DNA of 60,363 nt from Octopus bimaculoides (lineage: Eukaryota), in assembly GCF_001194135.2 (NCBI RefSeq), contig NC_068987.1, forward strand, positions 32,018,221 to 32,078,583, in the 5' to 3' direction. The position numbers and the translations under genes were made by a program. Shown piece after piece: positions 5,228-49,547 of the stretch (the stretch's first letter is position 1; each line of letters begins with the position of its first letter). The notes beneath the pieces were generated by a model. It did no database searches, had not been told where the DNA came from, and saw nothing but the letters and a program-made list of their open reading frames with translations.

Positions 5228-5605
5228 AAAAACGGCGAACTGGCAAAACCGTTAGCACGCCGGGTGAAATGCTTAGCGGCATTTCGTCCGTCTTCATGCT
5301 CTGAGTTCAAATACCACGTGGTCTTTGCCTTTCATCCTTTCCGGGTTGATGAAATAAGTACTAGTTGATTACTGGAGTCGAATCAATCCACTTACCCCAC
5401 TCCACGAAATTGCTGGCCTTGTGCCAAAATTTGAAATCAGTGTTAACGTCTCGCAAGATGGCGAGCTGGCAGAATTTTTACCACACCGGGCAAAAGGCCT
5501 GTCTTTATATTCTGAATTCTAATTCCGTCGTGATCGACTTTAGGGTCAGTATAATAGACTCGCCCCCTCCCCCGAACTTGCTGACTTTGTGCCAAAATTT
5601 GAAAC
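5228..5605 (+). mobile_element. Two head-to-tail SINE family B copies
   Basis: Both begin GGCGA(A/G)CTGGCA and end GTGCCAAAATTTGAAA; separated and flanked by a triplicated 16-bp motif. Confidence 0.8.
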
Positions 5606-10518: not shown

Positions 10519-12895
10519 CGAGATTATTTACTATAAACAGTATTATTTCGTTTCTGCTAACCTTTATTTTAGCACCTTCAAATATGCGGCTGCCAAATGT
10601 TTATAATCAAAAATTACTAGTAATCTGTTGACTCGTGTTGTGTTGTTTCCTGATGCAGCTTCATGGAAGAAGCAGGTAATGCAGCGTTCATCTTTCTGCC
10701 TGTCAGAGCAATTCAACGAATTATATTTAAGAAAATCTTTTTAATATATTTTTCAATCATTGATTTCATGGAAACTTTGATTGACGAACAGGTTTTATGT
10801 TGTCGTTTATGATTTTGTTTTTGCTCGCTGTTTTTCGCTGTAACAATATGAGCTGGAAATAGGTTTGCGTTTATCATCGATTTATTCATATTACGTTCAT
10901 GATGTTAAATGGGTGTGGGTAGTTTCGGTTTAAAGCTTAGTGGTGGAGAGTGACGCTGTGCACTGAAGGGGCTCAACGTTGGCGCGTGTTGTTGCTGTTT
11001 TTACTGCTGCTGCAGCTGTTGATGTTCTTTAGCTTCAGATCAACTCCAGTTGCGTAGGCACATAAGGTGAAGACACTCCAACTGTGACTATTCCGTACTT
11101 TTTTAGAGGTATCTAGAACCATATTATCTGATATGCCCTTTCTTTTCTTTCTTTCTTTCTGTTTTTTCGACAGGTCGGTGTGACTTGTTGTTGATGGGTA
11201 AGTAACTGTAAGGTGATGGTTGTGATGGTGGTGGTGAGGGAACCGGTGGTGGCCATGGTGACGGTGGTCGTGGTAGTAGTGACGATAGTGGCAGCAGCAG
11301 TGATGATTATTATGGTGCTGCTAAAATGGACAAAGATGGACACGGGAGTAATGTCATCATGATCCAGCATCCACTGGGGAATTTGTCCGAAACACTCGTT
11401 AATTCTACAGGGGTCGCACAGCCTACTGCAGTTAACTAATTTCTAATGGGTGTAATGGGTGCCTTTTTCGTGCCATCGGCATGGGTACCAGTTACGTGAC
11501 ACCAGCATCGGTCACGACTACGATCTCGTTTGGCTTGACGAGTCTTCTCAAGCACATCTCCAAGAAATTTAGTACCATATTTAAGCATCTAGATCGGCGG
11601 TTGCAAACCTCGGATCTGCAGATCTTTGGAATTCATAATGGTAGTACTGGAGGTCCGTGAGCTAAGATCAAAATTTAAGTAAACGTCCAAAATTCAAGAG
11701 ACTATAGTAAAATTCGTTTAAATAAGAATTCTTGGAAATGAAAAGATTGGTAATTACTGATCTTGATGAACAAACCAGTACTTTGAATAATGCAATACTA
11801 GATTAGTTCTTGCTGAAAACAAGAGACAGCAGTCAAGTCTAGAAAATGTTTGATCATATATCAGCAGATTCAGGGTTGAACAACAAAAACCAAAGCTAGG
11901 TTAACTGAGGCAATGTAGGATAAAATGTTGTACCCAAGCATATAACAACGATTTAAACATACCCCTGAAATATAAGCGATAATGAGATTTGCCTCACAGA
12001 TACAGAACATATCTACAAGGATTTGAACTGGTGACGTTAGAATATGTAACCCAATATCAAATCAAATCACCCGTTTTATGAGTGTAGATACTAGTTTATA
12101 CTGCAAGCTGGGTACGAAACCATGCCGTTCAGCCAGCAATCTTAGGTTCTATCAAAAAACAAATGGACAACTCTAGCATAACAGGATATACTGGATGAAT
12201 TTACGTAATAGACAAGCAGACAGAATCACTGCTGCATGAGAATGAAAAATTATAGATGAGCAAGCAATTTCAGAAAAAAAAAGAACAAATCTGAAAACAG
12301 ACAAACAACAACAAAGCCATCTAACAAAAATAAAAAAAGAATAACCAACGAATTCGCAAATGAATTGACGATAACTCTTGGTGGCGCTTCAACAGACCGT
12401 TAGAAAACAGCAGTGGAAACTATAGTAATGAATACGCTTCAATGCATAAAAAATTAGATAAAATACTGCCTGAAGATCAAAAGGAAACTGAAGTTGCGAA
12501 GAAAAGAATTCATTTTAAATTGGTTAAAAATATTTGCAGTTACCGTTGAAATTCCATGATTGTTTTGAAATCTGAAAGATTCTTGAAAATCATGAAATAC
12601 AGAATTGTATATTTTTAAGCGCTAAATTTTTGAAATGGCATAAATTTAATGCAAACAGTTTGAAAATGCGGTCTTAAGGGTGAATATCTTTGAAAACTAT
12701 ATTCTTTGTTATACACTCTTCACTTCTTCTACCTTTAGAGTTGTTACATATTATTTTTATCTTTACATCAAGAAGTTTCGGTAAATATATGGAACGATAT
12801 TTAATACATGGTCAGAACTAATTACAATAACCAACATATTTTGGTTAGATTACATTGCTTGTAATGTAATTTAAACTCCTCTACAATGAGATCAA

Positions 12896-13122
12896 TTGGT
12901 TTCAAAGTTTGGCTCAAGGCCATCAATTTCGAAGGAGGGAATAAATCGTTTACATCGACTGCAGTGCTTAACTGGTACTTATTTCATCGCCCCACCCCCA
13001 CAAAAAAGGACGAAAGGTTAAGTTAACCTCTGCGGAATTTCCACTCAGAAAATAAAGATAGATGAAATGCCTGTAAGCATTTTCTCCGGTATGCTAACGA
13101 TTCTGTTAGCTCGCCGCCTTAA
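12896..13122 (-). mobile_element. SINE family B
   Basis: Reverse complement reads TTAAGGCGGCGAGCTAACAGAATCGTTAGCATACCGG...GCCAAACTTTGAAACCAA. Confidence 0.85.
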
Positions 13123-13719
13123 AGAATGATGTCAATTGAAAAGAAAATAAACTAATCTCGTGCTATAAAAAAATATATAGAATGTCAAAAACTTAATACA
13201 AGTGGGTTGTTTTCTAAAACAGATACTTNNNNNNNNNNNNNNNNNNNNNNNNNNNNNNNNNNNNNNNNNNNNNNNNNNNNNNNNNNNNNNNNNNNNNNNN
13301 NNNNNNNNNNNNNNNNNNNNNNNNNNNNNNNNNNNNNNNNNNNNNNNNNNNNNNNNNNNNNNNNNNNNNNNNNNNNNNNNNNNNNNNNNNNNNNNNNNNN
13401 NNNNNNNNNNNNNNNNNNNNNNNNNNNNNNNNNNNNNNNNNNNNNNNNNNNNNNNNNNNNNNNNNNNNNNNNNNNNNNNNNNNNNNNNNNNNNNNNNNNN
13501 NNNNNNNNNNNNNNNNNNNNNNNNNNNNNNNNNNNNNNNNNNNNNNNNNNNNNNNNNNNNNNNNNNNNNNNNNNNNNNNNNNNNNNNNNNNNNNNNNNNN
13601 NNNNNNNNNNNNNNNNNNNNNNNNNNNNNNNNNNNNNNNNNNNNNNNNNNNNNNNNNNNNNNNNNNNNNNNNNNNNNNNNNNNNNNNNNNNNNNNNNNNN
13701 NNNNNNNNNNNNNNNNNNA

Positions 13720-14045
13720 ATATTTCTAAGTCTCTCTAAAGGAGACTACGGCAGCGGTACTGGAAATTAATAGTTATCGCCAAGCCAACATGGCAGTCCC
13801 AAAATTAGGACGAAAGTTGCCGTGAATTAGCCCCAAGAAGCCATCGCCTCTAGCTAGCTATGTGACACACGAAACCTGTGTCCTTTATAACCTTCGAACA
13901 GGGGAGGTCAGCAGTGTCCCCCTGCTGGTTTGGCATCTGCAGACTAGTTTCAGGGTGTTGCCCCTTGTCAATGCAGAGCAGCCAAGCCCTAGCCAGGCGG
14001 CGCTGCTGACTATCTGTTCGAAAGTTATTTATCTAATTTCAGTGG
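13720..14045 (-). mobile_element. Hammerhead-containing non-coding repeat (retrozyme-like), homolog of 15967-16443
   Basis: Minus strand aligns by eye to 16300-16440 plus 16090-16130 (GACCTCCC...GGACACAG...GTGTGTC...GGGCTAA...TCGTCCT...GGACTGCCA...TTGGC) and carries an HHR at the same relative position; left end lost in a gap. Confidence 0.75.
13936..13977 (-). ncRNA. Type I hammerhead ribozyme, degenerate core
   Basis: Minus: TCTGCA-ttgacaa-GGG(GCAACA)CCC-T-GAA-ACTAGT-C-TGCAGA. 6-bp stem I, palindromic stem III, GUC site; core TTGACAA is CTGACGA with two transitions. Confidence 0.75.
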
Positions 14046-14415
14046 AATCTATACTTCTTGGTTGTTGATTTTTTAACGTCCATTGATTTCTTTGTAGATC
14101 CACTTTCAGCTGTTACAGAATAAAATCAAAGAGTTTTTTTTATGTTGGAATATAACGGAAAGACAGCATGGCCGGATTGCATGGCCAGAAAGGTGTTGAC
14201 CGACTTCATTGCGTTGTCTGAATATCACATCACGTGGGCAAAGACTGAGTCGTTTGTTTCGTTTTTGCAACATTCCCTGTATAAGACATTACTAGTGGAT
14301 AAGGCGTTGCGAGTGAGAGGTGTCCACTCCCTGAACAGACTAAAATCGAATTTTTGATGACCTGACATTTATAAAAACAACTTTCAATTTTGCCACATTC
14401 CAAAATATGGCGAAA

Positions 14416-14635
14416 TATTGGTTTCAATTTGTGGCACAAGGCCTGCAAATTCGAGGGATGGGGTAAGTCGATTACATCAACTCCAATGTTCAACTGGTAC
14501 TTATTTTATCATCTCCGAAAGGATGAAAGGCAAAGTCGACCTCGGTGGAATTTGAACTCAGAACGCAAAGACGAACGAAATGGCGCTAAGTATTTTGCCC
14601 GGTGCGCTAGCGATTCTGCCAGCTCACCGCCTTAA
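14416..14635 (-). mobile_element. SINE family B
   Basis: Reverse complement TTAAGGCGGTGAGCTGGCAGAATCGCTAGCGCACCGGGCAAAATACTTAGC...GTGCCACAAATTGAAACCAAT. Confidence 0.9.
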
Positions 14636-15566
14636 AAATAAATATGTCAAGATATTGCGAATAAGAAGTCAACCGTTTCAGAGGACACCTGTGATTCGTT
14701 TTGAAAATTCCCACCAATTCCTTGGGTGTCTTTACCTGAGACCACTGAGTTTCAATTATTTGGACCAGACCCCCAATCTGAATATATCTTTCCACCACTA
14801 CCACCACCACCACCAGTCTCATGGGTCCTAAAAAGAGTCAGGTGTGTTTCCATCCATTCTTTTCTTTTTACTTTAATATTTCTTACAAGAAATCAGGACT
14901 GCATCGCAAAAGCAAACACAAACACAAATTTTTCAACTGGAACAAGAAAAATCTGACATAATTTTAATATTTAATATCACCCAATATTCAATTCAAACGA
15001 ATATAGCTCCATCTATATTAACGAAGTAAGTCAAAACGAACATAATAAGGCAAAGCTAACTTTCAATTTAGTTTTTACTAAATACAGAAATAGCCTGTAT
15101 TTCAGATCTATAGTGGATGTTGTGTTGTTCATTCTTAAGAATATTAGAGGCATAACAAAAGTAAAGCGATTCGACTGAAAATTGAAACTGTTCGCAGTAT
15201 CAGCTTGACGAGAGATTTTCACTTGATTCATGATTAACTTTCTCGTGTAAAGAATATCTATTTATACCTGACACCAGTTCAGTATATAATCAACTACTTG
15301 ACCTTTCAGGATCAGAGATGCAATTATCAAGTGATCAGCTCAATTAGCTTAACTAAACAAAGAATAGGAATTATGACAGCCGCAACTTACTCAAGAGCAT
15401 CGACGAAAGAAAAAGGTTAACCGTTTGAATAAGTTCGTATGTCATGGAGAAAGATAAGAATGTTGACGTTTGGAGTCCTTCATTACAGAGAGAAATTATT
15501 TTTGTCAATACAAACCATCTTTAGATTTCTCAGACACTCGTTTATATATTTACAGAAGAGAGAGGG

Positions 15567-15597
<31 letters not shown>

Positions 15598-15966
15598 GAG
15601 ATAGAGAGAGAGAGGGAGAGAAGGGATGGGAGGGAGGGAGGGAGGGGCAGAGAGAAGGAGACAGAGACAGACAGACTGAGAAGGGAAAAGGCTATACTTG
15701 GAAATCCATCTTATGTCACTGAAAGAGCTAACTCACCTCCTATTCTCCAGACTTTATTACTAACGTCCGTGGTTGTTGTTATAGTTGTTGTTACTATTGT
15801 TGTTGTTGTTATTTCGTCCCAGATCAACCTTTATCTAGCAGGCCTATGATCAAAAGTATTCCAGGTGTGGCCATCCTGTTTTTCGCAAAGTGCAGAGAAC
15901 TCAGCATCACATTTTCTATCTCGCTCTTTTACTAAGACGACAGAGTATGATTTATGGGAAATTTAA

Positions 15967-16443
15967 CTATACAGACACAGATTGTGTGTCGATAGTCAGC
16001 TGGAAAAGATGTTTTCCTGTGGCTAAAACAACAGTAACATCGTCCTTTATAGGACTGCCACATCCTGTTGGCATATAAACTTTACTATTCGGTACTGTTA
16101 CTGCATATCTCTCGCTCAAAGATTTAAAACAAGTTGTTTTTCTCTATACGAGATCAGCAACTGTGTGTCGCTTAAAGAATATATAGTATTTTCGAGTAGA
16201 AAGAGCTTTCGTCACTAGCTTGAGGTTGTCTCACACTGAGGACAGATAACCACCCAGAAACCTAGGTCTGTGAGTATCATGTAAGGCTAGAGATGGGAGC
16301 GATGACCTCCCTTGCGAATGCTATACGGACACAGACTGTGTGTCGAAAGCCAGCTGGAAAAGATGTTTTCCTGGGCTAAAATAACAGTAAAATCGTCCTT
16401 TATAGGATTGCCACATTCTGTTGGCATATAAAACTTCACTATT
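15967..16443 (+). mobile_element. Retrozyme-like element: 354-bp unit plus 123-bp terminal redundancy with internal hammerhead
   Basis: Direct repeats 15967-16089 and 16321-16443 (offset 354) flank an HHR at 16230-16274; no coding capacity evident. Confidence 0.75.
16230..16274 (+). ncRNA. Type I hammerhead ribozyme
   Basis: CTCACA-CTGAGGA-cagataaccaccca-GAA-ACCTAGGT-C-TGTGAG. Perfect 6-bp stem I, intact CUGANGA and GAAA, palindromic stem III, GUC site; stem II eroded. Confidence 0.8.
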
Positions 16444-17071
16444 AGCTAACATTTTAAACAGATAAAACGATTCACATAGGGTCTTCTTCGTTAGCTCAAC
16501 CAAAATTCGTTTATCTCTTTAAAAAAAATAACAATTTTAGGTAAATAGAATGAAATATAGCCAATCCGCATGAAATACAGCTACTGTTTTTTAATATTTG
16601 TACGAACAAAGTACAGGCTTACCATTTGCAATAGCTGAACATGAAACCTCAAAATAAGATTTAGTTTTAGCTATTTTTCCATATGAAGGCGAATGGTCGG
16701 TGGTCCGTCAAATACATCGTGTAGTATTTTACGAAACAAGGCATATGGGTTTCAATCACCAACCAATGAGCAGCTGCAATTATTCCTTCTCTACATACTC
16801 CTTTGGATAGAAAAAGTATATATGTATGTATGCATGTAGTTCGCTAATTCATTCATTTTTAAATCCGTTTGTCCATGCTAACATGAGATGCTCTCCCTGT
16901 CGTTAAGCCTTATCTGTTTTTCAAGTAATGGATCTAATAGTATACTTCTGTTCCCTAGAAAAAATATGTTATAACATGTCGTCTATTAGAAGTTCTCCTA
17001 TACGATATTTTGCAGTAATAATCTACTTTCACACGTTCGATTGTGCAGAAACAATCGAATATGTGTGTGTG

Positions 17072-17119
<48 letters not shown>

Positions 17120-19225
17120 ACTGTTGCAGTCGATTAGCCTACTTTCCAGAATCATAACCATTCCACTGCATTCGTCTATATTCAAAACGGTGGGGTATGA
17201 TTTGGCTATTATTTCTTGCTGGGCACCACTTCATCTCTCTCCCTTGTTGGCCCATATATAATATATTAAATAATAATGGGTGTAGTTGTTGTTTTGGTCC
17301 AAATCAACTAATATTCAAAAGCATTCAAGTTGCGACCATTCCAACCTGTTTTTTTCTTTTTGTTTTTTTTTTTTTAGAAGTAGTGTATCTAGAATTATAT
17401 TGTCTATTGTGTCCTACTTTTTAAAGACAGTATAGTGCGATTTGAGCAACTCGGGAATAATTCGCAGAGGCATCCTAAAATATTGTTTACATTTCATAGA
17501 AGTATCAATCCAAATGGAAATAAGGAATGTAAAAGTATGTGAACTATATTTAATATGACTCAGAAATAATCTAACTTTTCCATGCTGAATAATTTTATTT
17601 GCAACCGACAGTAGTCGTCACTTGTAACAATGGGGGAAATTAATAGGGAAAAGGCAATGGTGTTTTGAAATAAAATACGTTGGTTATTTAACTATATTTT
17701 GTAAGGTTTAAATAATGAATCGGAAATTAGTCTTTCCTTGTGAGAGAAGTTACGACTAATCTCATAAACAGTCGTGCCAACACTACTCTGAAATAGTCGG
17801 GACATTTTTATTTCGATTTATTGGGTGATAATATCTATTTGTAAACATCTATAGGGTTTCGTCGATCCCGTATGAATATTTCCTCCGGAAATTAATATGT
17901 AGTGCTTCTACGATAGACAACATGGTGAATCCTAGACACTTGAGAAATAAAAAAAAAAAGGAAAATATATAAATAACAGACAATCACTTTCTTGGATAGA
18001 TTATAAGGAATGTTAAAACTATTGAATGCTCTTAAATTTCGCTGTTTAACTGATCGATTGTTTACATTTGTTATCTGTAGAAATCGATAATTTTTACAGA
18101 TGAGAAGCAACATCCTGGATTCAAGCCAACGAAAAGTTGTCTGATTTTTAATTCATATTTACAATGATTATTTATGTGTTGTTGTTGCTGCTGTTGTTGT
18201 TGTGTAATTCCTGGTCGGCCATGATCAAGTAGACTTAAGATCAAGATCAAATGAGTTCCAGCCATGACTATCCCGTCTTTTTCTTATATGATTTACCTAA
18301 GATTCCGTTATCTTTTAGTGTGGATTTTCAGTCATTAACTCTTCGTCAGTAGTCCTCAATTCGAAGTAGGGTGCGTAAGAAGACAAGAATGATCATACTC
18401 GGGATTTCATATATTTTATTTAACAGGCATGTTTTGTATTTACATGTGCATATATAATTTATTTAATGGAACGACTTCCATGAAACAGCACACATAATAG
18501 GGATCTTTTCTAGCACGACATACTAGATAATATTATGAAAGTGCATAATTATTAAAGGAGAAATAAGTAAAAAAAAAATGTTAAAAACTACTGCTTATAA
18601 GTAATGTGTGCGTGATTCCACATTACAATTCAAGGCTGGTATTTTTTATTGAACACGATATAACAATGTTCAGTAAGACAAAAGGAAACAAGGCGAGAGA
18701 CTGATGCGACATTATTTCGCGTGGAGTACTGAGTGACTCTAGTTTGAGTTTGAATTCGTCAACTATTATAACCGAATGCCAACTTTCCCAGAACCTGTGA
18801 TTCTGTGGGAAAACTCGCTCACTTCCTATGAAGTCAACCAGTGCAAATTAGTCGAGCTATATTCATGTAGGTCTTTATGCATTTTATGGCGACACATCGC
18901 CTTTTATGGCGTTATGCTAAGTCGTGGTGCTGATCCGAGAAAATCTAAAAGCGATGCTTCAAAATCTCAGCAAAAGCCACGCTACCGGAGTTTGTTATAA
19001 CACAAACGAAATTATAATTTCGTGCTGCAAAAATGATTAGAACAATAAGAGTAAATACATTATATAACATTACAGAAACCATACGAACAAAACGTTCATA
19101 GTATATACATAATTTAAGATGGTCTGATATATGTAAAAATTGTTATTGCACAAAAATATATTATTCATATTAGTAATATCTTTCTTTAGGAATAATAGCT
19201 CTGTGTGTCTGTACATCAATAGGTA

Positions 19226-20516
19226 CGATGGTAGGCTCAAAAGCTCATAGGCCGAGCAAGATACTTTCATGGAATGTGACCAAATGAGGTTTATTATTCA
19301 ACATAGAACCCTTTACGGTTCACACACTTTTTCCGTCGGTGTTGCAATGCTTGGATTCCATTGCCGAAAAGTATTTCATTCTGTTGATCAAAAAAGTCAT
19401 CAATAGCAGATATGACGTCATCATCACCGCGACACTGGTTCCCAACCAAGATTTTCTTCATGCTGGGGTACAGATGATAGTCAGAAGGGTCAAGTCAGGA
19501 TAATAGGGAGAGCGGTCAACTAGTTCAATGTCACAGTCACGCACAGCAGCCATTGAAACCAAAGACTTGTGCACTGAAGCATTTTCCTGATGAAGCAGGG
19601 TTCCATTCATCAGTTTTCCTGAGCGTTTGGTCTTGATAGACTTTTGTAACTGCCTCAGCAAGTCGACATAGTACTCTCCATTGATGATGTGGCTCTTTTG
19701 AAGATAGTCAATAAGCACAATGCCTTTTGCATGCCAAAAAACTGAGGCAATCACCTTCTCTGCAGGTGAAACTATTTTGGCCTTCTTTGGAGCAGTTGAG
19801 GAGGGGTGTTTACATTGCATTGATTGTCTCTTCGCCTTTGGCTCAAAGTGATAAACCAAGCACTCGTCTTGGGTTAAGGAACGTTCAAGGAACGAGCTGA
19901 ATCTGCCTGAAACAATGTCAAATTTTCCCGTGATGTGATCAACCTGATGGGCTTTTGATCAGGTGTCAGAAAACGTGGCGCTCACCGTGCAGAAACCTTC
20001 GACATGCAAAATTCATTGTACAGAATATTCTCAACCCTCTGACAGGATATGCTAATAGCATTGGCTGTTTGATTTATAGTCAATCGCCTTTCATCCTTCA
20101 CCATGTGGTGAACATAATCGATGTTTTCCTCGGTGCTGGCAGTTACAGGACGTCCACACCTTAGGTCATCTTCAATACTTTGCCTTCTCCTCCTAAATTC
20201 AGTTTGTCCACTTTTGCACTGTTGGCAAAGCTGGAACATCAGCCCCTAATGTAGCAACTATGTNNNNNNNNNNGGGTAAACTCTTTTCTTCTGTAGATAC
20301 TTGATAACACCACGATGCCAAATTTTGCACATTTTCAAGAGAAGTCGTAACTAATTACTTTCCTTTTGAAGTGTTCTTTAAACAGTCATGTGTCAGTTTA
20401 GCTGGAAAGAAAGAATGCAGTTATTAATAAGGAGAGTTCAGATTAAGCCATGCAAAATTTTACAGCTCAAGCATAATTCCTTCATAGTCAGCCTATGACT
20501 TTTCAGCTTACCCTCG
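19226..20516 (-). mobile_element. Mariner transposon, full length, inactive
   Basis: TIRs CGATGGTAGGCTCAAAAGCTCATAGGC and rc CGAGGGTAAGCTGAAAAGTCATAGGC with flanking TA; frameshifted transposase with VYHFEPKAKRQS, VIASVFWHAKGIVLIDYL, LLHQENASVH, DRSPYYPDL motifs; ~1.29 kb. Confidence 0.95.
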
Positions 20517-20589: not shown

Positions 20590-21340
20590 AAGTCTGTCAA
20601 TAGGGCGAGATAAATTGTGAAAAGCAGAAAGAAAATAAGCGTCTATGTTTAGAAGGTACAAAAGGTCGTTCAAGACTAGTAGATATATCGCACCAAATAT
20701 GTTTCGTGGAAGCAGCAGGGGAAGTAGACAAAATTCTAAAGATGACACAAAGTTCTTTAGTTGTAGCAGTTCTTCATCCGATTCTTGGTCCATACCTAAT
20801 TTTTCAAAATTGAAAGAATAATTGGAGTAAAGAGAATTCACATGAACATGGGATAAAGCATCAGCTACGCCATTATTAGAGTCCTTGATAAGGCTACAAG
20901 CGTGCAGAATCGTTAGCACACCGGGCAAAATGCTTAGCAGTGTTTCGTTTGTCTTTACATTCTGAGTTCAAATTTCTCCGAAGTCTACATTGCCTTTCAT
21001 CCTTTCCGGGTCGATAAAATAAGCAACAGTCGAGTACTAGGGTCGATGTAATCAACTTACCCGCTCCACCGAAATTTCAGGCATTGTGCCAAAACTTGAA
21101 ACCATTATTAGAGTCCTTAATGTAATGCATAATGGCAATAAGCTGCGATACAAAATCATAGTGCCAAATTTCCCTTGGATGCTTATTTAACCTGAAGAGC
21201 AAAAACTAATGGCTTCTGTGGTTTCATTCAATTTCAGACGTTTCGAAGGAAAAGGACAAAGGTTTTATCAGGAATTCTGAATAAATTGTCGTAAATCACC
21301 ACCGACTTTTACATCAAAAGCATCTGCCAGTAGAGAAAGA
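20590..21340 (-). mobile_element. Ty3/Gypsy pol fragment (RNase H to integrase junction), interrupted by a SINE
   Basis: Minus-strand translation gives DASDV-like/VGG, PLSFFSKRL, KPLVFAL, HYIKDSNNGVADALS, DQESDEELLQLK, AFHNLSRP, typical Gypsy RNase H and linker motifs. Confidence 0.8.
20887..21101 (+). mobile_element. SINE family B with 17-bp target site duplication
   Basis: CCATTATTAGAGTCCTT at 20870-20886 and 21102-21118. Confidence 0.9.
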
Positions 21341-22378: not shown

Positions 22379-23106
22379 GGCGGAGAAAAGATTGGGCAAG
22401 TGAGTGGTAGAGACGCCACTAGCATTTTGAGACACTGTCCTATTCTCTGATGAGTCCAGATTTGCTGCATTTCCTGACAGTGGTCGAGTGTGGATCTGGA
22501 GACTTTGTGATCAAGAATTTGATGTGAATGGAGTGCAGCCAACAATGAAACACGGCAGCTATTCTATGATGGTCTGGGGAGCAATTTGGAGCAATGATTT
22601 ATCAGAGCTAGTGGAGTGTGAAAGAAACATAAACTCAGATAAACATGTGTCCATATTGCAGAAACGACTCCTTCAAATCTTCTCCAGTGATGAAATGATT
22701 AAAGAAGACACTTTATGTATGGAAAATAAGGCTCCTTGTCACATGGCTAAAATGACCCAAGATCTGTTGGATGAGAATGGCATTGGAAAGCTTCTATGAC
22801 CAAGCCAGTCACCAGACATGAACCCTATTGAACACCTCTGGGACATAACGGACAGGACACTTCATAAAAAGAACAAGAAAGCATCTTCAATATCAGACCT
22901 TTTAAGATTACTGCTTGAAACTTGGCAAGAAATTCCACAAGAGAATATTCATCATGAGCAGTAACATGCCTAATAGGATCCTTGCATTGAAAAATGCAAA
23001 TGGCATGTCTACTGACTATTAAATATTCACATTATAACAATTAATAAATTCTTAATAAATTTTAATAAATTTTATAAGGGTGTCTATTTACTTCCGTCAT
23101 TCTCTG
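22379..23106 (+). mobile_element. Tc1-family transposon, 3' half, inactive
   Basis: [48 protein letters not shown] (DD34E motifs) with stops, then a TIR-like end. Confidence 0.92.
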
Positions 23107-23116
23107 TGTGTATGTA

Positions 23117-23151
<35 letters not shown>

Positions 23152-23215
23152 AATAAAATGAGACAACAAAGCCAAGTCTGTATGAATTTTCAGGACATTT
23201 ATAAAGAGAAAGTTA

Positions 23216-23263
23216 GTCTTACAGCTGTTTCTCGGATATTAGGGATATCCCTTCACCAGAGTC
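23216..23263 (-). ncRNA. Type I hammerhead ribozyme, degenerate; same family as 49337-49384
   Basis: Minus: GACT-CTGGTGA-AGGGATAT(CCCTA)ATATCCGA-GAA-ACAGCTGT-A-AGAC; ~75 nt of downstream sequence shared with the 49.3-kb copy. Confidence 0.75.
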
Positions 23264-23951
23264 GATGTGAGATAGTTATATATATATANNNNNNNNNNNN
23301 NNNNNNNNNNNNNNNNNNNNNNNNNNNNNNNNNNNNNNNNNNNNNNNNNNNNNNNNNNNNNNNNNNNNNNNNNNNNNNNNNNNNNNNNNNNNNNNNNNNN
23401 NNNNNNNNNNNNNNNNNNNNNNNNNNNNNNNNNNNNNNNNNNNNNNNNNNNNNNNNNNNNNNNNNNNNNNNNNNNNNNNNNNNNNNNNNNNNNNNNNNNN
23501 NNNNNNNNNNNNNNNNNNNNNNNNNNNNNNNNNNNNNNNNNNNNNNNNNNNNNNNNNNNNNNNNNNNNNNNNNNNNNNNNNNNNNNNNNNNNNNNNNNNN
23601 NNNNNNNNNNNNNNNNNNNNNNNNNNNNNNNNNNNNNNNNNNNNNNNNNNNNNNNNNNNNNNNNNNNNNNNNNNNNNNNNNNNNNNNNNNNNNNNNNNNN
23701 NNNNNNNNNNNNNNNNNNNNNNNNNNNNNNNNNNNNNNNNNNNNNNNNNNNNNNNNNNNNNNNNNNNNNNNNNNNNNNNNNNNNNNNNNNNNNNNNNNNN
23801 NNNNNNNNNNNNNNNNNNNNNNNNNNNNNNNNNNNNNNNNNNNNNNNNNNNNNNNNNNNNNNNNNNNNNNNNNNNNNNNNNNNNNNNNNNNNNNNNNNNN
23901 NNNNNNNNNNNNNNNNNNNNNNNNNNNNNNNNNNNNNNNNNNNNNNNNNNN

Positions 23952-25124: not shown

Positions 25125-25242
25125 CCGATGTAGACTTTGCCTTTCATTCTTTCAGGGTTGATAAAATAAATACCAGTTGAGCTCTGGGATCGATTTAATC
25201 GACTTACCCTGCCCCTAATTTGTGCCAAAATTTGAAACCAAT
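25125..25242 (+). mobile_element. SINE family B, 3' half
   Basis: GACTTTGCCTTTCATTCTTTCAGGGTTGATAAAATAAATACCAGTTG...GTGCCAAAATTTGAAACCAAT. Confidence 0.8.
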
Positions 25243-27528: not shown

Positions 27529-28855
27529 TCAGGTCGTCCCATATGTTTTGTCCGATTTTACCTTTTTTAAAACCGAATAAAATTTAATAGTATTTAAGAA
27601 TGTCTAATAGAATTAAAAATTAGTAAAAATTAATTTTATGCATTTGTGTACATTTAAACTAAGTAAATATTATTTTACAGAATAAGAATAATACGATTAA
27701 AATATCTTTGATTAAACGTTTTCTAACATGGAAGTATCCAAAGAGCATTTGAGGCACATAATGCTTTATGAGTACAAAAAGGGAAACTCTGCTGCCGAAA
27801 CGACTCGAAACATACACTCAGTTTATGGGAAAGAATGCTTGAATGAAAGAACTTGTACAAGATGGTTTGCAAAATTCAGAAGTGGAGATTTCAGCCTTGA
27901 TGATCAAGTTCGAACAGGACGCCCAGTTGAGTTTGATGATAAGCTCCTTGGGGCATTACTTGAAGAAAATCCTGCATTATCAGTTGAAGAATTGGCAATA
28001 ACGATTAGTTCAAACCATACAACTGTTCATCATCATCTTCAACAACTTGGAAAGGTTCGGAAAGTAAACAACTTGGAAAGGAAACTGTTCGTCGTCATCT
28101 TGGAAAATGGGTGCCTCGTGAATTGTCCGAAAGCAAACGCAAATCCCGAGTTGACATATGCTCTTCTCTCCATTCTCGCGAACTCATTTCACCCTTTTTA
28201 GATAGACTTGTGACTGGTGACGAAAAATGGATCTTCTATCGAAATGTTAAACGTCGTAAACAGTGGCTTGGTAAAAGGAAAAAAGCTCACTACAACCGAG
28301 AAGGGAACTTCATGGAAAAAAGTTCTTCTCACTATCTGGTGTGATTGCAAAGAAGTAATTCACTTTGAATTGTTATCACCTAACGCAACGATCAATGCTC
28401 AAGTCTACTGTCAGCAATTAGAGCGTTTGAACCAAGCTTTGAAGAAAAAAGACCTGCTTTAGTGAATCAAACAGTAGTGATGTTTCATCAGGACAATACG
28501 TGACCCCACATTGCAAAGATCACATCACAGAAGATCGAAGAGCTTGGTTGGGAAAAAATTCCTCATCCACCTTATTCTCCCGACCTTGCTCCTTCGACTA
28601 CCATTTGTTTTGTAGTTTACAGAATCATTTGGGAGACATAACTTTCGCAAGCCAGGAGGAGGTAGAAACTGACATTTCAGAGTTCTTCGTTTTGAAACCA
28701 AAAGAGTTTTACATTGATGGGATTAAAAAGCTTGTAAGTAGATGTAAGGAAGTCATAGATAATCAAGGAAAGCTGATTAAATTTCAATTAAATATAACAT
28801 TTTATCACTTGTTTTCTTTATATAAAATTCGGACAGAACTTATAGGATGACCTGA
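27529..28855 (+). mobile_element. Mariner transposon, full length, inactive (transposase from 27728)
   Basis: TIRs TCAGGTCGTCCCATATGTTTTGTCCG and rc TCAGGTCATCCTATAAGTTCTGTCCG with TA flanks; MEVSKEHLRHIMLYEY, WFAKFRSG, LVTGDEKWIFY, FHQDN, YSPDLAP-FDYHLF motifs broken by frameshifts. Confidence 0.97.
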
Positions 28856-31800: not shown

Positions 31801-32192
31801 TATTGTTTTAAAAAAAAAGTGTAAAGTCATTACAAGTATGTTGTACACAAACATAACTTCATACAGGACTTCAAGGCCCCACTCAGTTCCGATTCCAATA
31901 AACCGTAACGTTTTTAACACAATTTAGATGTTTATACCATTTTAAATGTTTAGCTGGACCAGCATTCGGACCACACTCTCCACAGTTCTCTCCCCGTCCA
32001 CCTTTTCCCAGCAAACATTGATCAACAGATGTTCGCACTGGTTATCAATCACATTAATCTCATTAAATCAGGAGAGTGACTGACAAAGATTATGGGTATC
32101 CACTCTTCCTCTTCCTCATCCTCCGACTAACTTATTAAAGTACTTTTTTTAAAAATACAGTTCCTTTTCTTCTAGTTAGTAACTGGCAGAAA

Positions 32193-33987: not shown

Positions 33988-34457
33988 GCCTTCTAACGTC
34001 AGTATGACCAGTCAAAAGAGTATACGACTGTATTTATTTCAAATGACTGTCTACTAGTCTTCGACTAAAGCTTCCCATAATGTCTCTGATTCAGAAGTAG
34101 CAAATCCTGAACTTCATTTGCTCAAATTTAGTGCTTTCTGTATGATTGTTGAGCAACAAAATATTTTTAATGGCGTGACTGTTATTGTCTCTTCATTGAC
34201 CGAATCAATGCTAAACTTGCCCCACACACGTGTTGTTAGGGTTCAAATTCTACCTACCACTGTCTATTGTATAAAAGGAAAGATGAATAGAAGACATTTG
34301 CCCAAAACGATGATTAGTAGGACTTGACTCAAGACCATCTGGTTGCGAAGAGAACTTCTGAACTACACAGACATGGATGTGGCTATAACATAAAATGGGT
34401 TATGTAATTTTTGGGGTATATAGATATCTAATTTTTATCAATAATTTTCAGAATTAA

Positions 34458-34636: not shown

Positions 34637-34713
34637 AATAAATTTCAGAATTAAAGTAGCTAAATCACTCTGAAGGAGGAGTTAGAAAAACTCACATTTG
34701 TCCCTACCTATTA

Positions 34714-42463: not shown

Positions 42464-45400
42464 TAAATGTGAGTTCACAGAGAGCAATTGTAGTAGTAAA
42501 GCAATTTACTCAATTCCTTATATAAAAGGCTGAAGTACTCCAGGCAGTATTAAGAGTATCAACTCTATATGCCTCCATTTAAGATTGTATGTGAATATAC
42601 ATTTATATTAGTACATTTGCTGCTAAATAAAACTATTGAAAGAATGTTCTTTAATTTATACATAGAGGAATTGAATGAAATATCCAATAACAACAATGAA
42701 TTCACATTGGAACCTATTATTTCTCAATCAAAGTTCCAACATATCGAAGTAAGGAACCAATATCTTGTATCATATTAACCAGTCCTCTGCTATATATTAT
42801 GGCTAACACTGATCATTCACGATTTAGCCAAGCCACGGAAAGAAAATATATCTGTTTTCTACCAAACGATGTTTTGATTGGTTGTTTATACAAATAATTT
42901 TACTAAATTTCTGTGAAAAGCGTACAAACTGCAAGTTTCCGATTCATATAGCAACTAAGTGACGTAGTAATGTAGTCTGAGCCATAAAGTACGATAAAAT
43001 TTGTATTGTTAATGATTAAGTGATATATATATAAGATTTGTTTGTTAATGTTTAAGTGATATATAAGATATCAAAGTTCAAAATTAATGTTGGTTTATAT
43101 TCTTGAGTTTTCGTTTCTGCTACCACTGTAGTCAGGATTTGTTACAAGTTGTTATTCTATAACATTGTAAAATAACTATCGAGCTGTACAGTAATGTAAT
43201 AGATGATCAAATTTACTTTGAAATGATATTAAATACCGAATTGTAACGTGTATAATGAACCCCCTAATTTAGGGGGCTTAAAATTTAGAAAAGAAGGTTT
43301 TGTAAGGGATTATAATACTATCCATGTATAAAAAAAACTCCCATATATTTTTAACCTAATTTTTGACAAAAAAGGGTTCCTTGTACACATTAAAATATGG
43401 TAAATGACATTTGCATGATACTATAAACTTCATTCTACAAAACAATATAATAGAGACTTTTATATAACTAAGATAGGGTTTTGGTCACTATTGGCCTAGA
43501 GAAAAGTCCTTTAAAAGTCAATATTTTGGAACACCATAACTCATTTGTGCAGGGAGTTATTTGAGAAAATGTATGTAAGTGTCGGAGGTTTGTCTGGTTT
43601 TTCTTAGAGGAATCTGTCCTGATGAGATCTTCTTCTTTCGAGATAATATTGTATAAAACAGTATCATTTAAGTATAAANNNNNNNNNNNNNNNNNNNNNN
43701 NNNNNNNNNNNNNNNNNNNNNNNNNNNNNNNNNNNNNNNNNNNNNNNNNNNNNNNNNNNNNNNNNNNNNNNNNNNNNNNNNNNNNNNNNNNNNNNNNNNN
43801 NNNNNNNNNNNNNNNNNNNNNNNNNNNNNNNNNNNNNNNNNNNNNNNNNNNNNNNNNNNNNNNNNNNNNNNNNNNNNNNNNNNNNNNNNNNNNNNNNNNN
43901 NNNNNNNNNNNNNNNNNNNNNNNNNNNNNNNNNNNNNNTTTAAAATACATTTATTTACATATACACCAAACTAGTTTCAGCAATATTTTTTGTTTGTCAA
44001 TGGTAAAAGTTTAAAGTTATGATGAATTCGAAAAACATCTTTAAAAGTTTCAATGGTAAAAGTTTTAAATTATGAATTAGAAAAACATCTTTAAAAGTTT
44101 CAATGTTAACAAATTAAAAAGTTTCAATGTTGACAAATTAACATGTTCAAAACAGATAAATTTATCATTAGGAATTAGGAGGACAGGTGCAAGTTTGAAT
44201 GTTCATAGCAGTCAATAATATTAAAACTGTATATCAATTTGTTTAAATATACAAAGTTCATTAATTTTAGTGGCGGTCGACAAGTCATACTGAAAAGAAT
44301 AAGAGAAAAATGAAAATAGTAAAAAAAGGGAATTTGTTTTACAGTTTCTCTGAACCTCTTTCCATAGACGCTTTCGCTTGTAGTGGCATGGTTTGGGATC
44401 AGATGTATTTATAATTTTTTCCGCGAGCGAATCTGATTTTTGATTCGTTAAAATACTGGTGAGGAGTTTTTTGCGGTGGTCAAGCTTGTTGTTCCGCTTG
44501 GTTGGTTTCCTTGTGGAGACGGCCATAAGTCATTCCGGTTGGTTGCTTCTAATAAAGGGTCATTTCGTTGTATTTTCTGAAGTTCGGTTTTGATTGGTCT
44601 GGAGTTAAGTGACGTCACCAACTGGTGTTTGTAGAAATTCATTGGACTAGAGGTAGGTGACGTCATCAACTGGTGTTTGTATGGTGATTTGGAGTTGTGG
44701 TTTCGGAACCCGGATGGAAGATTGTTACTAAAGTTTTAGAAAAAATTTGTTTGTTGTTCCTAGTTGTTTTTTGTGTTGAAATTTAGTCTTTTTTCTTTTC
44801 TTTTTACGGCTTTTTCTTATTTCTAAAGGATATTCAGCTGTGATTTATATTTTTTAATTAGTATGTTTACCTTATTTAAACGGAATTGGGTTGAAGTGTT
44901 TCCAATGCATTGCTTTGGTATTTAGGGTTTATGTCTACGGGGCATTAGTCTAGGTGCTTGCTTACGAGAATTTTCCTAGTGGTCCCGGATTTGTTGCCTG
45001 TGCACCGTAAGTCTATCCCTCAAAGTTAAGCTAGTTTGACCTATGTAATCCTCAGCACACCCTCCACTTTTGAGAACATAGATTAAGGTCTTTGAAGCAC
45101 ATATGAAGTCATATTTTATGGTAAAAGTTTGACCTGGCTTAAATTTGTATTTTGAGCCCTCTAAGAGGAGGATGCAAGTTCCGCAGTTAGGACGGTTGTA
45201 CTCTTTGACTTGTGGGGTTGTATTATTGGTGGGTAATTTGGCGCTGATGAACACGCTTTTCACTGAAATGTAGTAAAATTATTTGTATAAACAACCAATC
45301 AAAACATCGTTTGGTAGAAAACAGATATATTTTCTTTCTGTGGCTAGGCTAAATCTTGAATGATCAGTGTTAGCCATAATATATAGCGGAGGATTGGCTA

Positions 45401-47580: not shown

Positions 47581-49336
47581 TTGACACTACTAAATAAATA
47601 TAATGATGCCCTAAGTACATGCAACCACTGCTTTTTTCATACCTTCAGGTTTAACCAAAAATCTAAATGCAACCTAAATAAACACACAGCATATATCCAC
47701 AACATCCTTTAGGTAATCCCCAACAACCCTACTTAACTTTCCCTTATCTTCATTTTAATTTTTAATCTTTAATTTTTTAACTCCCCTATCTTACTTTAAG
47801 GATCTCAATCATTTAATACTACATATTTGGACATACAAGCAGGTACATGTGTGTGTGTAAATGTGTGTGTGTAAATGTGTGTGCATGTATTTTCATGTAT
47901 GTATATGTATATAGGTCTATGTATGTGTATATATATAAATATTTATGTACGTGTGTGTGAGTGTATCTATACATGCATGCATATGTATATACAAATATAT
48001 ACAAGTGAGTGTATGTGCATATAAGTATATGTAAGTACCTGTATACACGCGTGTGTGTGACTATAAGTAGGCGCGAGTGTGCCTGCATGTATGTATGTGT
48101 GTATGCATGTATATGTATGCACACGCATATGCATGTATGAATGCTTTATGGATATGTATGANNNNNNNNNNNNNNNNNNNNNNNNNNNNNNNNNNNNNNN
48201 NNNNNNNNNNNNNNNNNNNNNNNNNNNNNNNNNNNNNNNNNNNNNNNNNNNNNNNNNNNNNNNNNNNNNNNNNNNNNNNNNNNNNNNNNNNNNNNNNNNN
48301 NNNNNNNNNNNNNNNNNNNNNNNNNNNNNNNNNNNNNNNNNNNNNNNNNNNNNNNNNNNNNNNNNNNNNNNNNNNNNNNNNNNNNNNNNNNNNNNNNNNN
48401 NNNNNNNNNNNNNNNNNNNNNNNNNNNNNNNNNNNNNNNNNNNNNNNNNNNNNNNNNNNNNNNNNNNNNNNNNNNNNNNNNNNNNNNNNNNNNNNNNNNN
48501 NNNNNNNNNNNNNNNNNNNNNNNNNNNNNNNNNNNNNNNNNNNNNNNNNNNNNNNNNNNNNNNNNNNNNNNNNNNNNNNNNNNNNNNNNNNNNNNNNNNN
48601 NNNNNNNNNNNNNNNNNNNNNNNNNNNNNNNNNNNNNNNNNNNNNNNNNNNNNNNNNNNNNNNNATCCCTTAATACAGCCCTATCATATCACCCCTACCC
48701 ACATATCTCACGCTTAATCACTCCTTACCTTTCATCTCTTCCTATCCACCCCTCTCCCACTCCTCTCCCATCCTCCCCTCACATTATCTTGACCACCAAC
48801 TAACACTCCTTTTCTCACCTCTGTCGCTCTTTCTTCATTTCTTCATTTCACTCATTTCACTTTTTCCTTCTCTCTCCCTCTTCTTTTTTCTCTCTTATTA
48901 TCATTACTCTTTTATCCTTTTTCTTTTTTCTCTCTTTCTTCCTCTCATTTTCCCTTCTTCTCTTCATTTTGACCTATCTCCTCATTCTAATCATACACAT
49001 CTCCCCCACACCCACCATCTATCCACAAATACTACCAATATATTCTCAAATTTTCATTCACACCACAAAACCCCTTCGAATGGGCAACACAGAATCCACA
49101 GCTCCATACTTCAAAATGACAAAACACGAACTACTATCGGAACTTGCATACCATGTACAGGAAACTATTTTATCACTTCTATACACCACTTTACTCAAAT
49201 AATGGAACTGCAACTACAATCAATGCTTTATATTTTATTTCCACTTTCATTCTCTTATTTCCCTCTATTTTCCCTGTCTCCTCCTTTTCCATAACATTTC
49301 CTTATTTCGAACTCAAACATTTACCTCTCTCACATC

Positions 49337-49384
49337 GTCTCTGATGAAGGGATATCCATAATATCCCAGAAACAGCTGTAAGAC
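49337..49384 (+). ncRNA. Type I hammerhead ribozyme, intact core
   Basis: GTCT-CTGATGA-A-GGGATAT(CCATA)ATATCCC-A-GAA-ACAGCTGT-A-AGAC; 7-bp stem II, palindromic stem III, GUA site, 4-bp stem I. Confidence 0.88.
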
Positions 49385-49547
49385 TATATAGCTTTCCTTA
49401 TAAATGTCCTAAAAATTCCTCACAGCCTTGGCTTTGTTATCTGTTTTTGTCTAATATATATATATAGTAAGATAAGGATTCAGATAGAATCAGATACTTG
49501 AAAAGATATGGACCAAGTAGGGTTGAAAAAACCTGTGGTTCCAGCCT

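What the first reader, a model, noticed from the sequence alone, without database searches (positions are those of the whole stretch)
15967..16443. Candidate non-LTR retrozyme: 354-nt non-coding unit with a hammerhead and terminal redundancy
Seen: 123-bp direct repeats 354 bp apart enclose a type I HHR with intact CUGAGGA/GAAA, a 6-bp stem I, palindromic stem III and a GUC site at 16266-16268; there is no ORF. Established: metazoan non-LTR retrozymes are few-hundred-nt repeats with type I HHRs that are processed to circular RNAs, and palindromic-stem-III HHRs cleave as dimers. Inference: this 1.35-mer is a cDNA of a circular or multimeric RNA, probably mobilised by the PLE machinery present in this genome. 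I do not know of a description in cephalopods but cannot verify novelty. Stem II of this copy is eroded, so it may be inactive.
Basis: partly seen in the sequence, partly recalled or inferred. Interest (0 to 1): 0.88.

Follow-up and report, generated by a model that had tools for sequence, protein, structure and literature searches.

The report
Decayed hammerhead retroelement copy in octopus DNA
A 477-base non-coding insert in an octopus-type genome is most likely a dead, slightly longer-than-one-unit copy of a small hammerhead-ribozyme retroelement of the Penelope/retrozyme kind. That kind is already known from other animals. I found no report of it in cephalopods in the papers I could search.

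Summary
The sequence observation holds. Bases 15967-16089 and 16321-16443 are 91% identical direct repeats, 354 nt start to start. Between them, at 16230-16274 (+), lies a type-I hammerhead-like motif with CUGAGGA, GAAA, a perfect 6-bp helix I, the 8-nt palindrome ACCUAGGU as helix III, and GUC ending at 16268. Chance gives about 0.0025 such motifs per shuffled window, and none in 400 shuffles when the palindrome is required.

It is not a working ribozyme. Helix II cannot form, Rfam scores nothing, and the locus holds only one motif.

No ORF, RT/EN remnant, tRNA-like part, LTR feature or target-site duplication (TSD) was found. No second copy appeared in about 115 kb of octopus sequence (the window's non-gap DNA plus three loci).

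Best reading (about 0.55): an old, dead-on-arrival, 1.35-unit cDNA of a small non-autonomous element with a Penelope-type dimeric hammerhead, meaning a retrozyme "monomer derivative". Retrozyme membership is unproven.

Context supports the kind:
- The window holds a 5'-truncated Penelope RT/GIY-YIG remnant (44832-45347, -).
- It also holds a two-copy solo hammerhead repeat (49319-49454 and 23149-23281).
- An Octopus vulgaris locus carries at least 2.9 near-identical 544-nt tandem units, each with a hammerhead-like motif and a strongly structured circular fold (z = -5.9).

Verdict: new member of a known kind; moderate-to-low interest.

The parts
15967..16089 (+). Terminal redundancy, copy 1 (first 123 nt of the 354-nt unit)
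   Evidence: 91% identical to 16321-16443, E 1e-43. Similarity ends abruptly on both sides.
16090..16320 (+). Non-duplicated 231 nt of the unit; holds the hammerhead-like motif
   Evidence: No match elsewhere in the window or in 118 kb of fetched loci, of which only L001-L003 (61 kb) are octopus. No ORF with homologues.
16230..16274 (+). Type-I hammerhead-like relic: helix I 3' strand 16230-16235; core CUGAGGA 16236-16242; helix II region 16243-16256, which cannot pair; GAAA 16257-16260; palindrome ACCUAGGU 16260-16267; C17 at 16268, predicted cleavage between 16268 and 16269; helix I 5' strand 16269-16274
   Evidence: Descriptor scan. Null 0.0025 per window, and 0 of 400 shuffles with a palindromic helix III. 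No Rfam hit. Dimer cofold pairs the palindrome between the two molecules.
16321..16443 (+). Terminal redundancy, copy 2 (start of a second unit, ending at the right edge of the insert)
   Evidence: The sequence after 16443 does not continue into the unit.
49319..49454 (+). Context, not part of the element: solo Penelope-type hammerhead repeat 'B'. Motif at 49337-49384: helix I 4 bp, helix II 7 bp, palindrome ACAGCUGU. Its 3' end abuts a (TA)n microsatellite.
23149..23281 (-). Context: decayed second copy of repeat B (83% over 136 nt; core mutated to CUGGUGA; one helix II pair broken)
44832..45347 (-). Context: 5'-truncated remnant of a canonical Penelope-like element ORF (C-terminal linker plus GIY-YIG endonuclease region)
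   Evidence: 678 relatives. The long relatives carry RVT_1 plus a C-terminal GIY-YIG domain. tblastn maps residues ~579-739 of ~745 to this stretch only.

Best explanation
The 477-nt stretch 15967-16443 is an old, inactive insertion of a small (354-nt unit) non-coding retroelement. The element carries a Penelope-type, dimer-dependent type-I hammerhead. It was integrated as a longer-than-unit (1.35x) cDNA.

Proposed life cycle of the family. All RNA steps are inferred from the published retrozyme/PLE model (PMC7229834, PMC4209133, PMC7761336):
1. A master locus with at least 2 units is transcribed.
2. Hammerheads of neighbouring units pair through the palindromic helix III (ACCUAGGU) and cut after C17.
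3. The 354-nt monomer is ligated into a circle, or the multimer stays uncut.
4. A Penelope-like RT/GIY-YIG enzyme copies it by target-primed reverse transcription.
5. Copying runs past the starting point, which gives the 123-nt terminal redundancy.

This daughter copy has a single hammerhead, so it could never excise itself. It is a 'monomer derivative' in the sense of bioRxiv 10.64898/2026.07.22.740005.

The two redundant ends have since diverged by about 7%. If they were identical at insertion, the rate used in PMC13282606 gives roughly 10 My.

At some point helix II of the ribozyme was lost.

Shown: the repeat, the non-random motif, continuity through the cleavage site, absence of coding capacity, and PLE remnants in the same genome. 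Inferred: the RNA template, its circularity, and the mobilising enzyme.
For: - Repeat geometry: 123-nt ends 354 nt apart with sharp borders. One round of more-than-unit copying explains it. A DNA duplication needs two events.
- Hammerhead-like motif far above chance, with the palindromic helix III typical of dimeric animal and PLE hammerheads (PMC4209133).
- Neither end of the insert coincides with the cleavage site (the ends fall at unit positions 53 and 175), and the site is continuous inside. This is expected of a circle or an uncut multimer as template.
- Unit of 354 nt, GC 41% against 33% for the window. No ORF homologue. No Pfam domain in 14000-18500. No tRNA-like part. These fit the published retrozyme description (PMC7229834).
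- The circular fold is somewhat more stable than shuffles: z -1.8 to -2.8, against genomic controls of -0.13 +/- 1.1.
- PLEs are present: an EN remnant in the window, further remnants in the octopus loci, and published octopus repeat annotations (PMC13282606, PMC8967140).
- Solo PLE-type hammerhead repeats B and B' lie in the same window. A's hammerhead region resembles B's beyond the core boxes: 7 of 2000 constrained shuffles reach the observed score.
- An octopus genome holds a tandem array matching the retrozyme signature: O. vulgaris L001 18822-20420, 544-nt units 99.6% identical, one hammerhead-like motif per unit, circular fold z -5.9.
Against: - Only one copy of the unit was seen. There is none elsewhere in the window, in 61 kb of O. 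vulgaris and O. bimaculoides DNA, in the protein collections searched by six-frame query, or in the metagenome and prokaryote collections. So a family is not demonstrated.
- Helix II is absent and no Rfam model scores. Activity of the ancestor is assumed.
- No target-site duplication.
- The fold signal is modest and is present on both strands.
- The hammerhead lies outside the duplicated part.
- The motif resembles the PLE type, not the canonical loop-loop type described for most retrozymes.
Confidence: 0.55

Rival explanations
1. The hammerhead relic is an ordinary solo remnant of a 5'-truncated Penelope-like insertion, like repeats B and B'. The 123-nt direct repeat arose later by a DNA-level event: a local duplication followed by a deletion, or repair-associated copying. 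In that case there never was a 354-nt RNA unit.
For: Solo PLE-type hammerheads are the commonest state in animal genomes (PMC4209133), and two are in this window. No other copy of the 354-nt unit was found in about 115 kb of octopus sequence. No TSD. The hammerhead lies outside the duplicated segment.
Against: A tandem duplication gives two full units, not 1.35. After 16443 there is no trace of the rest of the unit, so a second event is needed. No PLE coding remnant or other repeat adjoins the element. The perfect 6-bp helix I differs from B's helix I, which suggests a separately maintained hammerhead lineage.
Confidence: 0.2
2. The real locus is a genuine tandem array of the 354-nt unit (a true multimeric retrozyme or satellite) that the gap-rich short-read assembly collapsed or truncated to 1.35 units.
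For: The window is a low-quality scaffold with 15 N runs totalling 5443 N. Short-read assemblers collapse arrays of this period. An intact array of a different unit exists in a long-read O. vulgaris assembly.
Against: The two repeat copies differ at 9% of positions and both junctions to unique flanks are assembled. The nearest N runs are 2.2 kb and 3.8 kb away. Collapse usually leaves gaps or identical copies.
Confidence: 0.1
3. Two independent insertions of a 123-nt dispersed repeat happen to flank 231 nt of unrelated DNA that contains a hammerhead relic.
For: Both copies have the same borders, as full-length copies of a short repeat would.
Against: No third copy of the 123-nt segment was found in about 115 kb of octopus DNA sampled. 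No terminal inverted repeats, no tRNA-like part, and no TSDs around either copy. Same orientation at 231 nt by chance is improbable for a rare repeat.
Confidence: 0.03
4. The duplication and the hammerhead-like string are unrelated coincidences with no ribozyme ancestry.
For: Helix II is missing and no covariance model recognises the motif.
Against: The expected number of motifs with a 6-bp helix I is 0.0025 per 60-kb window on both strands. That is on the order of 1e-5 for a 354-nt unit, and lower still if the palindrome is required. A second, better motif of the same architecture is in the window. A's and B's hammerhead regions resemble each other beyond the core.
Confidence: 0.03

Closest known systems
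Metazoan non-LTR retrozymes (Cervera & de la Pena 2020, PMC7229834; Li, Clavereau & Pollet 2026, bioRxiv 10.64898/2026.07.22.740005)
   Same: Few-hundred-nt non-coding unit, GC below 45%, type-I hammerhead polarity, more-than-unit organisation, no LTR/PBS/PPT, co-occurrence with PLEs. A mollusc (mussel) is among the described hosts.
   Different: Only 1.35 units and one hammerhead-like motif, against at least 2 complete motifs in tandem. Helix II is absent. No evidence of many copies or of circular RNA. At most it is a 'monomer derivative' of such a family.
Minimal hammerheads of Penelope-like elements and their pseudo-LTR partial tandems (Cervera & de la Pena 2014, PMC4209133; Craig et al. 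2021, PMC8557442)
   Same: Short palindromic helix III implying action as a dimer. Partial-tandem insertion giving terminal direct repeats. Mostly found as isolated decayed motifs. A PLE RT/EN remnant is present in the window.
   Different: No RT/EN ORF inside or next to the element. The unit is 354 nt, not about 3 kb. The hammerhead is not in the repeated ends. Helix I is 6 bp, against 4-5 in min-HHRs. The conserved G10.1-C11.1 pair and the long helix II are missing.
Schistosome Sm-alpha / Sj-alpha SINE-like hammerhead elements and newt satellite 2 (as reviewed in PMC6765202)
   Same: Non-coding repeat of about 330 nt with a type-I hammerhead that works in tandem or dimeric context.
   Different: No tRNA-like or pol III promoter part was detected. 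No array at this locus. No sequence similarity was tested or expected.
Plant LTR retrozymes (Cervera et al. 2016, as summarised in PMC6765202 and PMC7761336)
   Same: Non-autonomous, direct terminal repeats, hammerhead, proposed circular RNA intermediate.
   Different: Plant elements have type III hammerheads inside about 350-bp LTRs, plus PBS, PPT, 4-bp TSDs and GC above 55%. None of these is present here.

Membership tests
Hammerhead ribozyme, type I | Core boxes C3-U4-G5-A6-N7-G8-A9 and G12-A13-A14, A15.1-U16.1, H17 at the cleavage site | tested here: met
   CUGAGGA 16236-16242, GAAA 16257-16260, U16267, C16268.
Hammerhead ribozyme, type I | Helix I closing the motif through its 5' and 3' ends | tested here: met
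   CTCACA/TGTGAG, 6 Watson-Crick pairs. Shuffles give 0.0025 motifs per window with helix I of at least 6 bp.
Hammerhead ribozyme, type I | Helix II with a G10.1-C11.1 base pair | tested here: not met
   The 14 nt CAGAUAACCACCCA hold one G and one U and cannot form a stem.
Hammerhead ribozyme, type I | Match to a curated covariance model (Rfam hammerhead families) | tested here: not met
   No hit at gathering score on the window or at E<=10 on 15800-16600. The better motif B and the O. vulgaris motif are also missed, so the models are insensitive to this architecture.
Hammerhead ribozyme, type I | Self-cleavage | not testable with these tools
   Needs in vitro transcription of monomer and dimer.
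Metazoan non-LTR retrozyme | Tandem repeat with at least two consecutive units, each with a complete hammerhead | tested here: not met
   1.35 units, one motif, incomplete.
Metazoan non-LTR retrozyme | Unit of about 150-450 bp, GC below 45-50%, no ORF, no LTR/PBS/PPT | tested here: met
   354 nt, GC 41%. No ORF homologue. By direct reading of the sequence: no TG..CA ends, no tRNA-complementary site after 16089, and no purine tract before 16321.
Metazoan non-LTR retrozyme | Multicopy family in the genome | not testable with these tools
   No cephalopod genome collection can be searched by DNA. There were 0 further copies in about 115 kb of octopus sequence sampled.
Metazoan non-LTR retrozyme | Expressed as self-paired circular RNA of unit length | tested here: inconclusive
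   Only the fold could be tested: z -1.8 to -2.8 against controls of -0.13 +/- 1.1. Expression and circularity are not testable here.
Metazoan non-LTR retrozyme | Co-occurrence with Penelope-like elements | tested here: met
   PLE EN remnant at 44832-45347. Remnants in the O. vulgaris and O. bimaculoides loci. Literature: PMC13282606, PMC8967140.
Penelope-like element (autonomous or truncated copy) | RT and GIY-YIG coding sequence within or adjoining the element | tested here: not met
   No Pfam domain in 14000-18500. tblastn with 20 PLE proteins hits only 44832-45347.
Penelope-like element (autonomous or truncated copy) | Min-HHR architecture: helix II of 7-8 bp, helix I of 4-5 bp, unpaired nucleotide 5' of helix II, palindromic 15.2-16.2 / loop 3 | tested here: inconclusive
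   Palindrome met. Helix II not met. Helix I is longer (6 bp). Motif B at 49337-49384 meets all four.
LTR-type miniature element (TRIM / plant LTR retrozyme) | TG..CA LTR ends, PBS, PPT, 4-6 bp TSD | tested here: not met
   The repeats start CTATAC and end CTATT. No TSD within the 40-nt flanks.

The most novel reading that the evidence does not exclude
Octopods carry an undescribed, possibly still active lineage of Penelope-dependent retrozymes that make 350-550-nt circular RNAs. Their hammerheads share an unusual feature. All three octopus motifs seen here carry a nucleotide between the 3' strand of helix II and G12 (...CCC-A-GAAAC, ...UCU-U-GAAAC). In the two with a helix II (B and the O. 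vulgaris motif), it forms an A/A or U/U mismatch where canonical hammerheads have G10.1-C11.1. The window's element would be a fossil of that lineage. The near-identical 544-nt array in O. vulgaris would be a live member.
Probability: 0.3. Interest if true: 0.55.

Novelty: new member of a known kind. Interest (0 to 1): 0.35.

Why it matters
If the family is real, it extends hammerhead-bearing circular-RNA retroelements to cephalopods. Cephalopod genomes are repeat-rich, and their RNA biology (editing, abundant neural non-coding RNA) is closely studied. None of the octopus repeat annotations I could read mentions ribozymes.

A curated consensus would let annotators classify a share of the 'unknown' octopus repeats. 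It would also give a natural ribozyme cassette to test for circular RNA in octopus tissues.

The single copy in this window adds little by itself. It is inactive, and its kind and proposed mechanism are already published for other animal phyla, including a mollusc.

Tried and rejected
- Rfam at gathering score on the whole window, and at E<=10 on three stretches: no hammerhead or any other credible RNA family.
- Six-frame translation of the element against 5.8 billion proteins, as a trick to find other copies through spurious ORFs: nothing.
- Exact look-up of two window ORFs: not on record.
- DNA scans for a 23-mer conserved in both repeat copies in metagenome and prokaryote genome contigs, and a gapped hammerhead pattern in metagenome contigs only: 0 hits. 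These collections are not expected to hold cephalopod DNA, so this says little.
- TRF missed both the 1.35-mer and the 544-nt O. vulgaris array, whose period exceeds its limit.
- A TRIM/LTR reading, a MITE reading (no terminal inverted repeats) and a SINE reading (no tRNA-like part) were rejected.
- A coding reading was rejected.
- Loci L004-L006, fetched through mariner proteins, share only the mariner with the window and are not octopus.
- ORF 51124-51381(-) looked GIY-YIG-like by eye, but it has no Pfam hit and no relation to the PLE protein set.
- ORF 44979-45278 found nothing by word-indexed search, Pfam or PDB. The exhaustive HMMER search and its long relatives then identified it.
- The paper by Lunse et al. 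2017 on dimeric PLE hammerheads is not held.

Full report
**Observation.** Bases 15967-16089 and 16321-16443 are direct repeats: 124 aligned columns, 91% identity, blastn E 1e-43. The start-to-start offset is 354, then 353 after a single-base indel. The copies differ by 7 transitions, 2 transversions and 2 one-base indels, and similarity stops sharply at both ends of each copy. Nothing else in the 60-kb window resembles the 477-nt stretch.

Between the repeats, on the + strand, lies CTCACA|CTGAGGA|CAGATAACCACCCA|GAAA|CCTAGG|TC^TGTGAG at 16230-16274. This has both hammerhead core boxes, a perfect 6-bp helix I, A15.1 to U16.1 forming the 8-nt palindrome ACCUAGGU, and GUC at 16266-16268.

**Is it more than chance?** I wrote a type-I descriptor that ignores helix II and ran it on the window and on dinucleotide-preserving shuffles.
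- Motifs with helix I of at least 6 bp occur 0.0025 times per shuffled window, both strands.
- With a palindromic helix III, none occurred in 400 shuffles.
- With one core mismatch allowed, the null is 0.03 per window.

The real window has two such motifs, this one and a better one at 49337-49384. So the string descends from a hammerhead.

It is not an intact one. The 14 nt between the core boxes cannot form helix II. No Rfam hammerhead model matches, even at E<=10. Those models also miss the better motifs, so their silence is weak evidence.

**What the element lacks.**
- No ORF above 62 aa, and no protein homologue for any of its six frames.
- No Pfam domain in any inter-stop segment of 14000-18500.
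- No tRNA-like part.
- No TG..CA ends, PBS or PPT, and no terminal inverted repeats, by reading the sequence. No target-site duplication.
- No dispersed repeat adjoins it. The nearest is a SINE-like repeat at 14414-14637.

Folded as a 354-nt circle, it is somewhat more stable than shuffles: z -1.8 to -2.8 depending on strand and on which repeat copy is used. Twenty-eight genomic control segments gave -0.13 +/- 1.1. Its GC is 41%, against 33% for the window.

**Host and context.** The window is a gap-rich eukaryotic scaffold with 15 N runs. A mariner HTH ORF has its best hit in Octopus vulgaris. The window shares dozens of SINE and mariner copies, at 75-95% identity, with loci I fetched from O. 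vulgaris and O. bimaculoides chromosomes. It shares only the mariner with three non-octopus contigs. It is therefore an octopod genome.

Penelope-like elements are present.
- ORF 44979-45278 (-) has 678 relatives. The long ones (716-756 aa) carry RVT_1 followed by a C-terminal GIY-YIG domain.
- tblastn with these proteins maps residues ~579-739 to 44832-45347 only. That stretch is a 5'-truncated PLE remnant, and none lies near the element.
- Similar remnants occur in the octopus loci.
- Published octopus repeat annotations list Penelope families (PMC13282606, PMC8967140). Neither paper mentions ribozymes.

**Other hammerhead elements found.** The motif at 49337-49384 has helix I of 4 bp, helix II of 7 bp, an unpaired base 5' of helix II, and the palindrome ACAGCUGU. 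This is the published 'min-HHR' architecture of PLEs (PMC4209133).

It belongs to a 136-nt dispersed repeat (49319-49454). A decayed second copy lies at 23149-23281 (-), 83% identical, E 4e-34. Both copies end in a dinucleotide microsatellite. This fits 5'-truncated PLE insertions and the microsatellite bias reported for PLEs (PMC8557442).

The hammerhead regions of the finding and of this repeat resemble each other beyond the core boxes. With the boxes held fixed, 7 of 2000 shuffles reach the observed alignment score. That is suggestive, not proof.

By luck, the O. vulgaris locus L001 (OX597837.1) ends in a head-to-tail array.
- It holds at least 2.9 units of 544/545 nt, 99.6% identical, GC 32.5%.
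- Each unit carries TGAG|CTGAAGA|...|GAA|ACGTACGT|T^CTCA.
- As a circle, the unit folds with z -5.9 on the hammerhead strand and -4.7 on the other.

This is the retrozyme signature in an octopus genome. It is unrelated in sequence to the window's unit.

**Interpretation.** A single act of copying more than one unit of a periodic or circular RNA explains the A-B-A' structure with sharp borders. A DNA tandem duplication would give two full units and then need a deletion.

The insert runs uncut through the predicted cleavage site, and its ends fall at unit positions 53 and 175. So the template was a ligated circle or an uncut multimer. Which of the two cannot be told from one copy.

With a single hammerhead, the copy could never release itself. 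This corresponds to the 'monomer derivatives' of Li et al..

The two ends differ by 7.4% in substitutions. If they were identical at insertion, and using the octopus calibration in PMC13282606 (Jukes-Cantor distance 0.09 for 25 My), the insertion is roughly 10 My old. This is an inference.

I give this explanation about 0.55.

**Rivals.**
- A solo PLE hammerhead relic plus a later DNA-level duplication: 0.2.
- A real array collapsed by the assembler: 0.1.
- Two insertions of a 123-nt repeat: 0.03.
- Coincidence: 0.03.

**Comparison with the known.** The element works like, and most resembles, metazoan non-LTR retrozymes (PMC7229834). A 2026 preprint argues these are non-autonomous derivatives of PLE pseudo-LTRs (10.64898/2026.07.22.740005).

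Membership fails on the defining feature that could be tested, at least two tandem units each with a complete hammerhead. It is untestable on copy number and circular RNA.

The hammerhead's palindromic helix III and lack of drawable loop-loop contacts place it nearer the PLE hammerheads than the canonical loop-loop type.

A search for retrozyme, hammerhead and octopus together returned three papers, and neither of the two listed describes such elements. The retrozyme papers I read do not mention cephalopods. So this is at most a taxon extension: a new member of a known kind.

**What could not be done.** No collection here allows a DNA search of cephalopod genomes. The decisive question, whether the 354-nt unit is a family and what its consensus hammerhead looks like, therefore remains open. 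The exact searches and wet-lab tests are listed under decisive next steps.

Noticed in passing
window 49319-49454 (+); motif 49337-49384: A much better hammerhead than the one in the finding: GTCT|CTGATGA|A-GGGATAT-CCATA-ATATCCC-A|GAAA|CAGCTG|TA^AGAC. It has the published PLE min-HHR architecture and sits in a 136-nt repeat that ends in (TA)n. No Rfam hit.
   Followed up: yes
window 23149-23281 (-): Decayed second copy of that 136-nt hammerhead repeat: 83% identical, core mutated to CTGGTGA. It ends in (CA)n/(TG)n and abuts the N gap 23289-23951.
   Followed up: yes
window 44832-45347 (-): 5'-truncated remnant of a canonical Penelope-like element ORF (linker plus GIY-YIG region). Long relatives carry RVT_1 plus a C-terminal GIY-YIG domain. 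No hammerhead was recognised in its 3' flank. That flank holds two copies of CCAGTTG(A/G)TGACGTCAC, each containing the palindrome TGACGTCA, near 44610-44675.
   Followed up: partly
L001 18822-20420 (Octopus vulgaris OX597837.1, about 39,000,070-39,001,669): Head-to-tail array of at least 2.9 units of 544/545 nt, 99.6% identical, running off the end of the fetched locus. Each unit has a type-I hammerhead-like motif with the palindromic helix III ACGUACGU. The circular fold has z -5.9. The first unit is 5'-truncated and abuts a mariner copy. This is a candidate live cephalopod retrozyme.
   Followed up: partly
window 16243-16260, 49344-49368; L001 19162-19190: All three octopus hammerhead-like motifs carry a nucleotide between the 3' strand of helix II and G12 (...CCC-A-GAAAC twice, ...UCU-U-GAAAC). 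In the two with a helix II, an A/A or U/U mismatch sits where canonical hammerheads have G10.1-C11.1. Whether this is a tolerated lineage-specific variant or a sign of inactivity is unexplained.
   Followed up: no
window 16225-16252: GGUUGUCU (16225-16232) can pair with AGAUAACC (16245-16252), 8 bp with two G-U pairs. This would sequester the 3' strand of helix I and the CUGAGGA box, and it is the predicted MFE fold of the motif. It may be an inactive conformer or chance.
   Followed up: no
window 27583-28857 (+), 59115-60037 (-), 19461-20245 (-), 22431-22796 (+): Mariner/Tc1-type transposase remnants. The first two are 86-91% identical to copies in the O. vulgaris locus, and they were the handle that identified the host as an octopod.
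   Followed up: partly
window 14414-14637, 5233-5439, 12895-13123, 20904-21109, 25125-25242, 32191-32414, 32512-32696, 34454-34640: Copies of a SINE-like dispersed repeat of about 220 nt, also abundant in the O. vulgaris and O. bimaculoides loci (70-87% identity). In L001 14884-15753 it forms a short array.
   Followed up: no
window 51124-51381 (-): 86-aa open frame (…NVVYKCDVTETNTYIYISCSVNLKERLHKHY…RCRLC) that looked nuclease-like by eye. It has no Pfam hit and no relation to the PLE protein set. Unexplained.
   Followed up: partly
window 46933-47241 (+): 103-aa frame with …[37 protein letters not shown]…. From memory this looks like the C-terminal tail of a LINE ORF2. It had no Pfam hit and was not checked further.
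   Followed up: no
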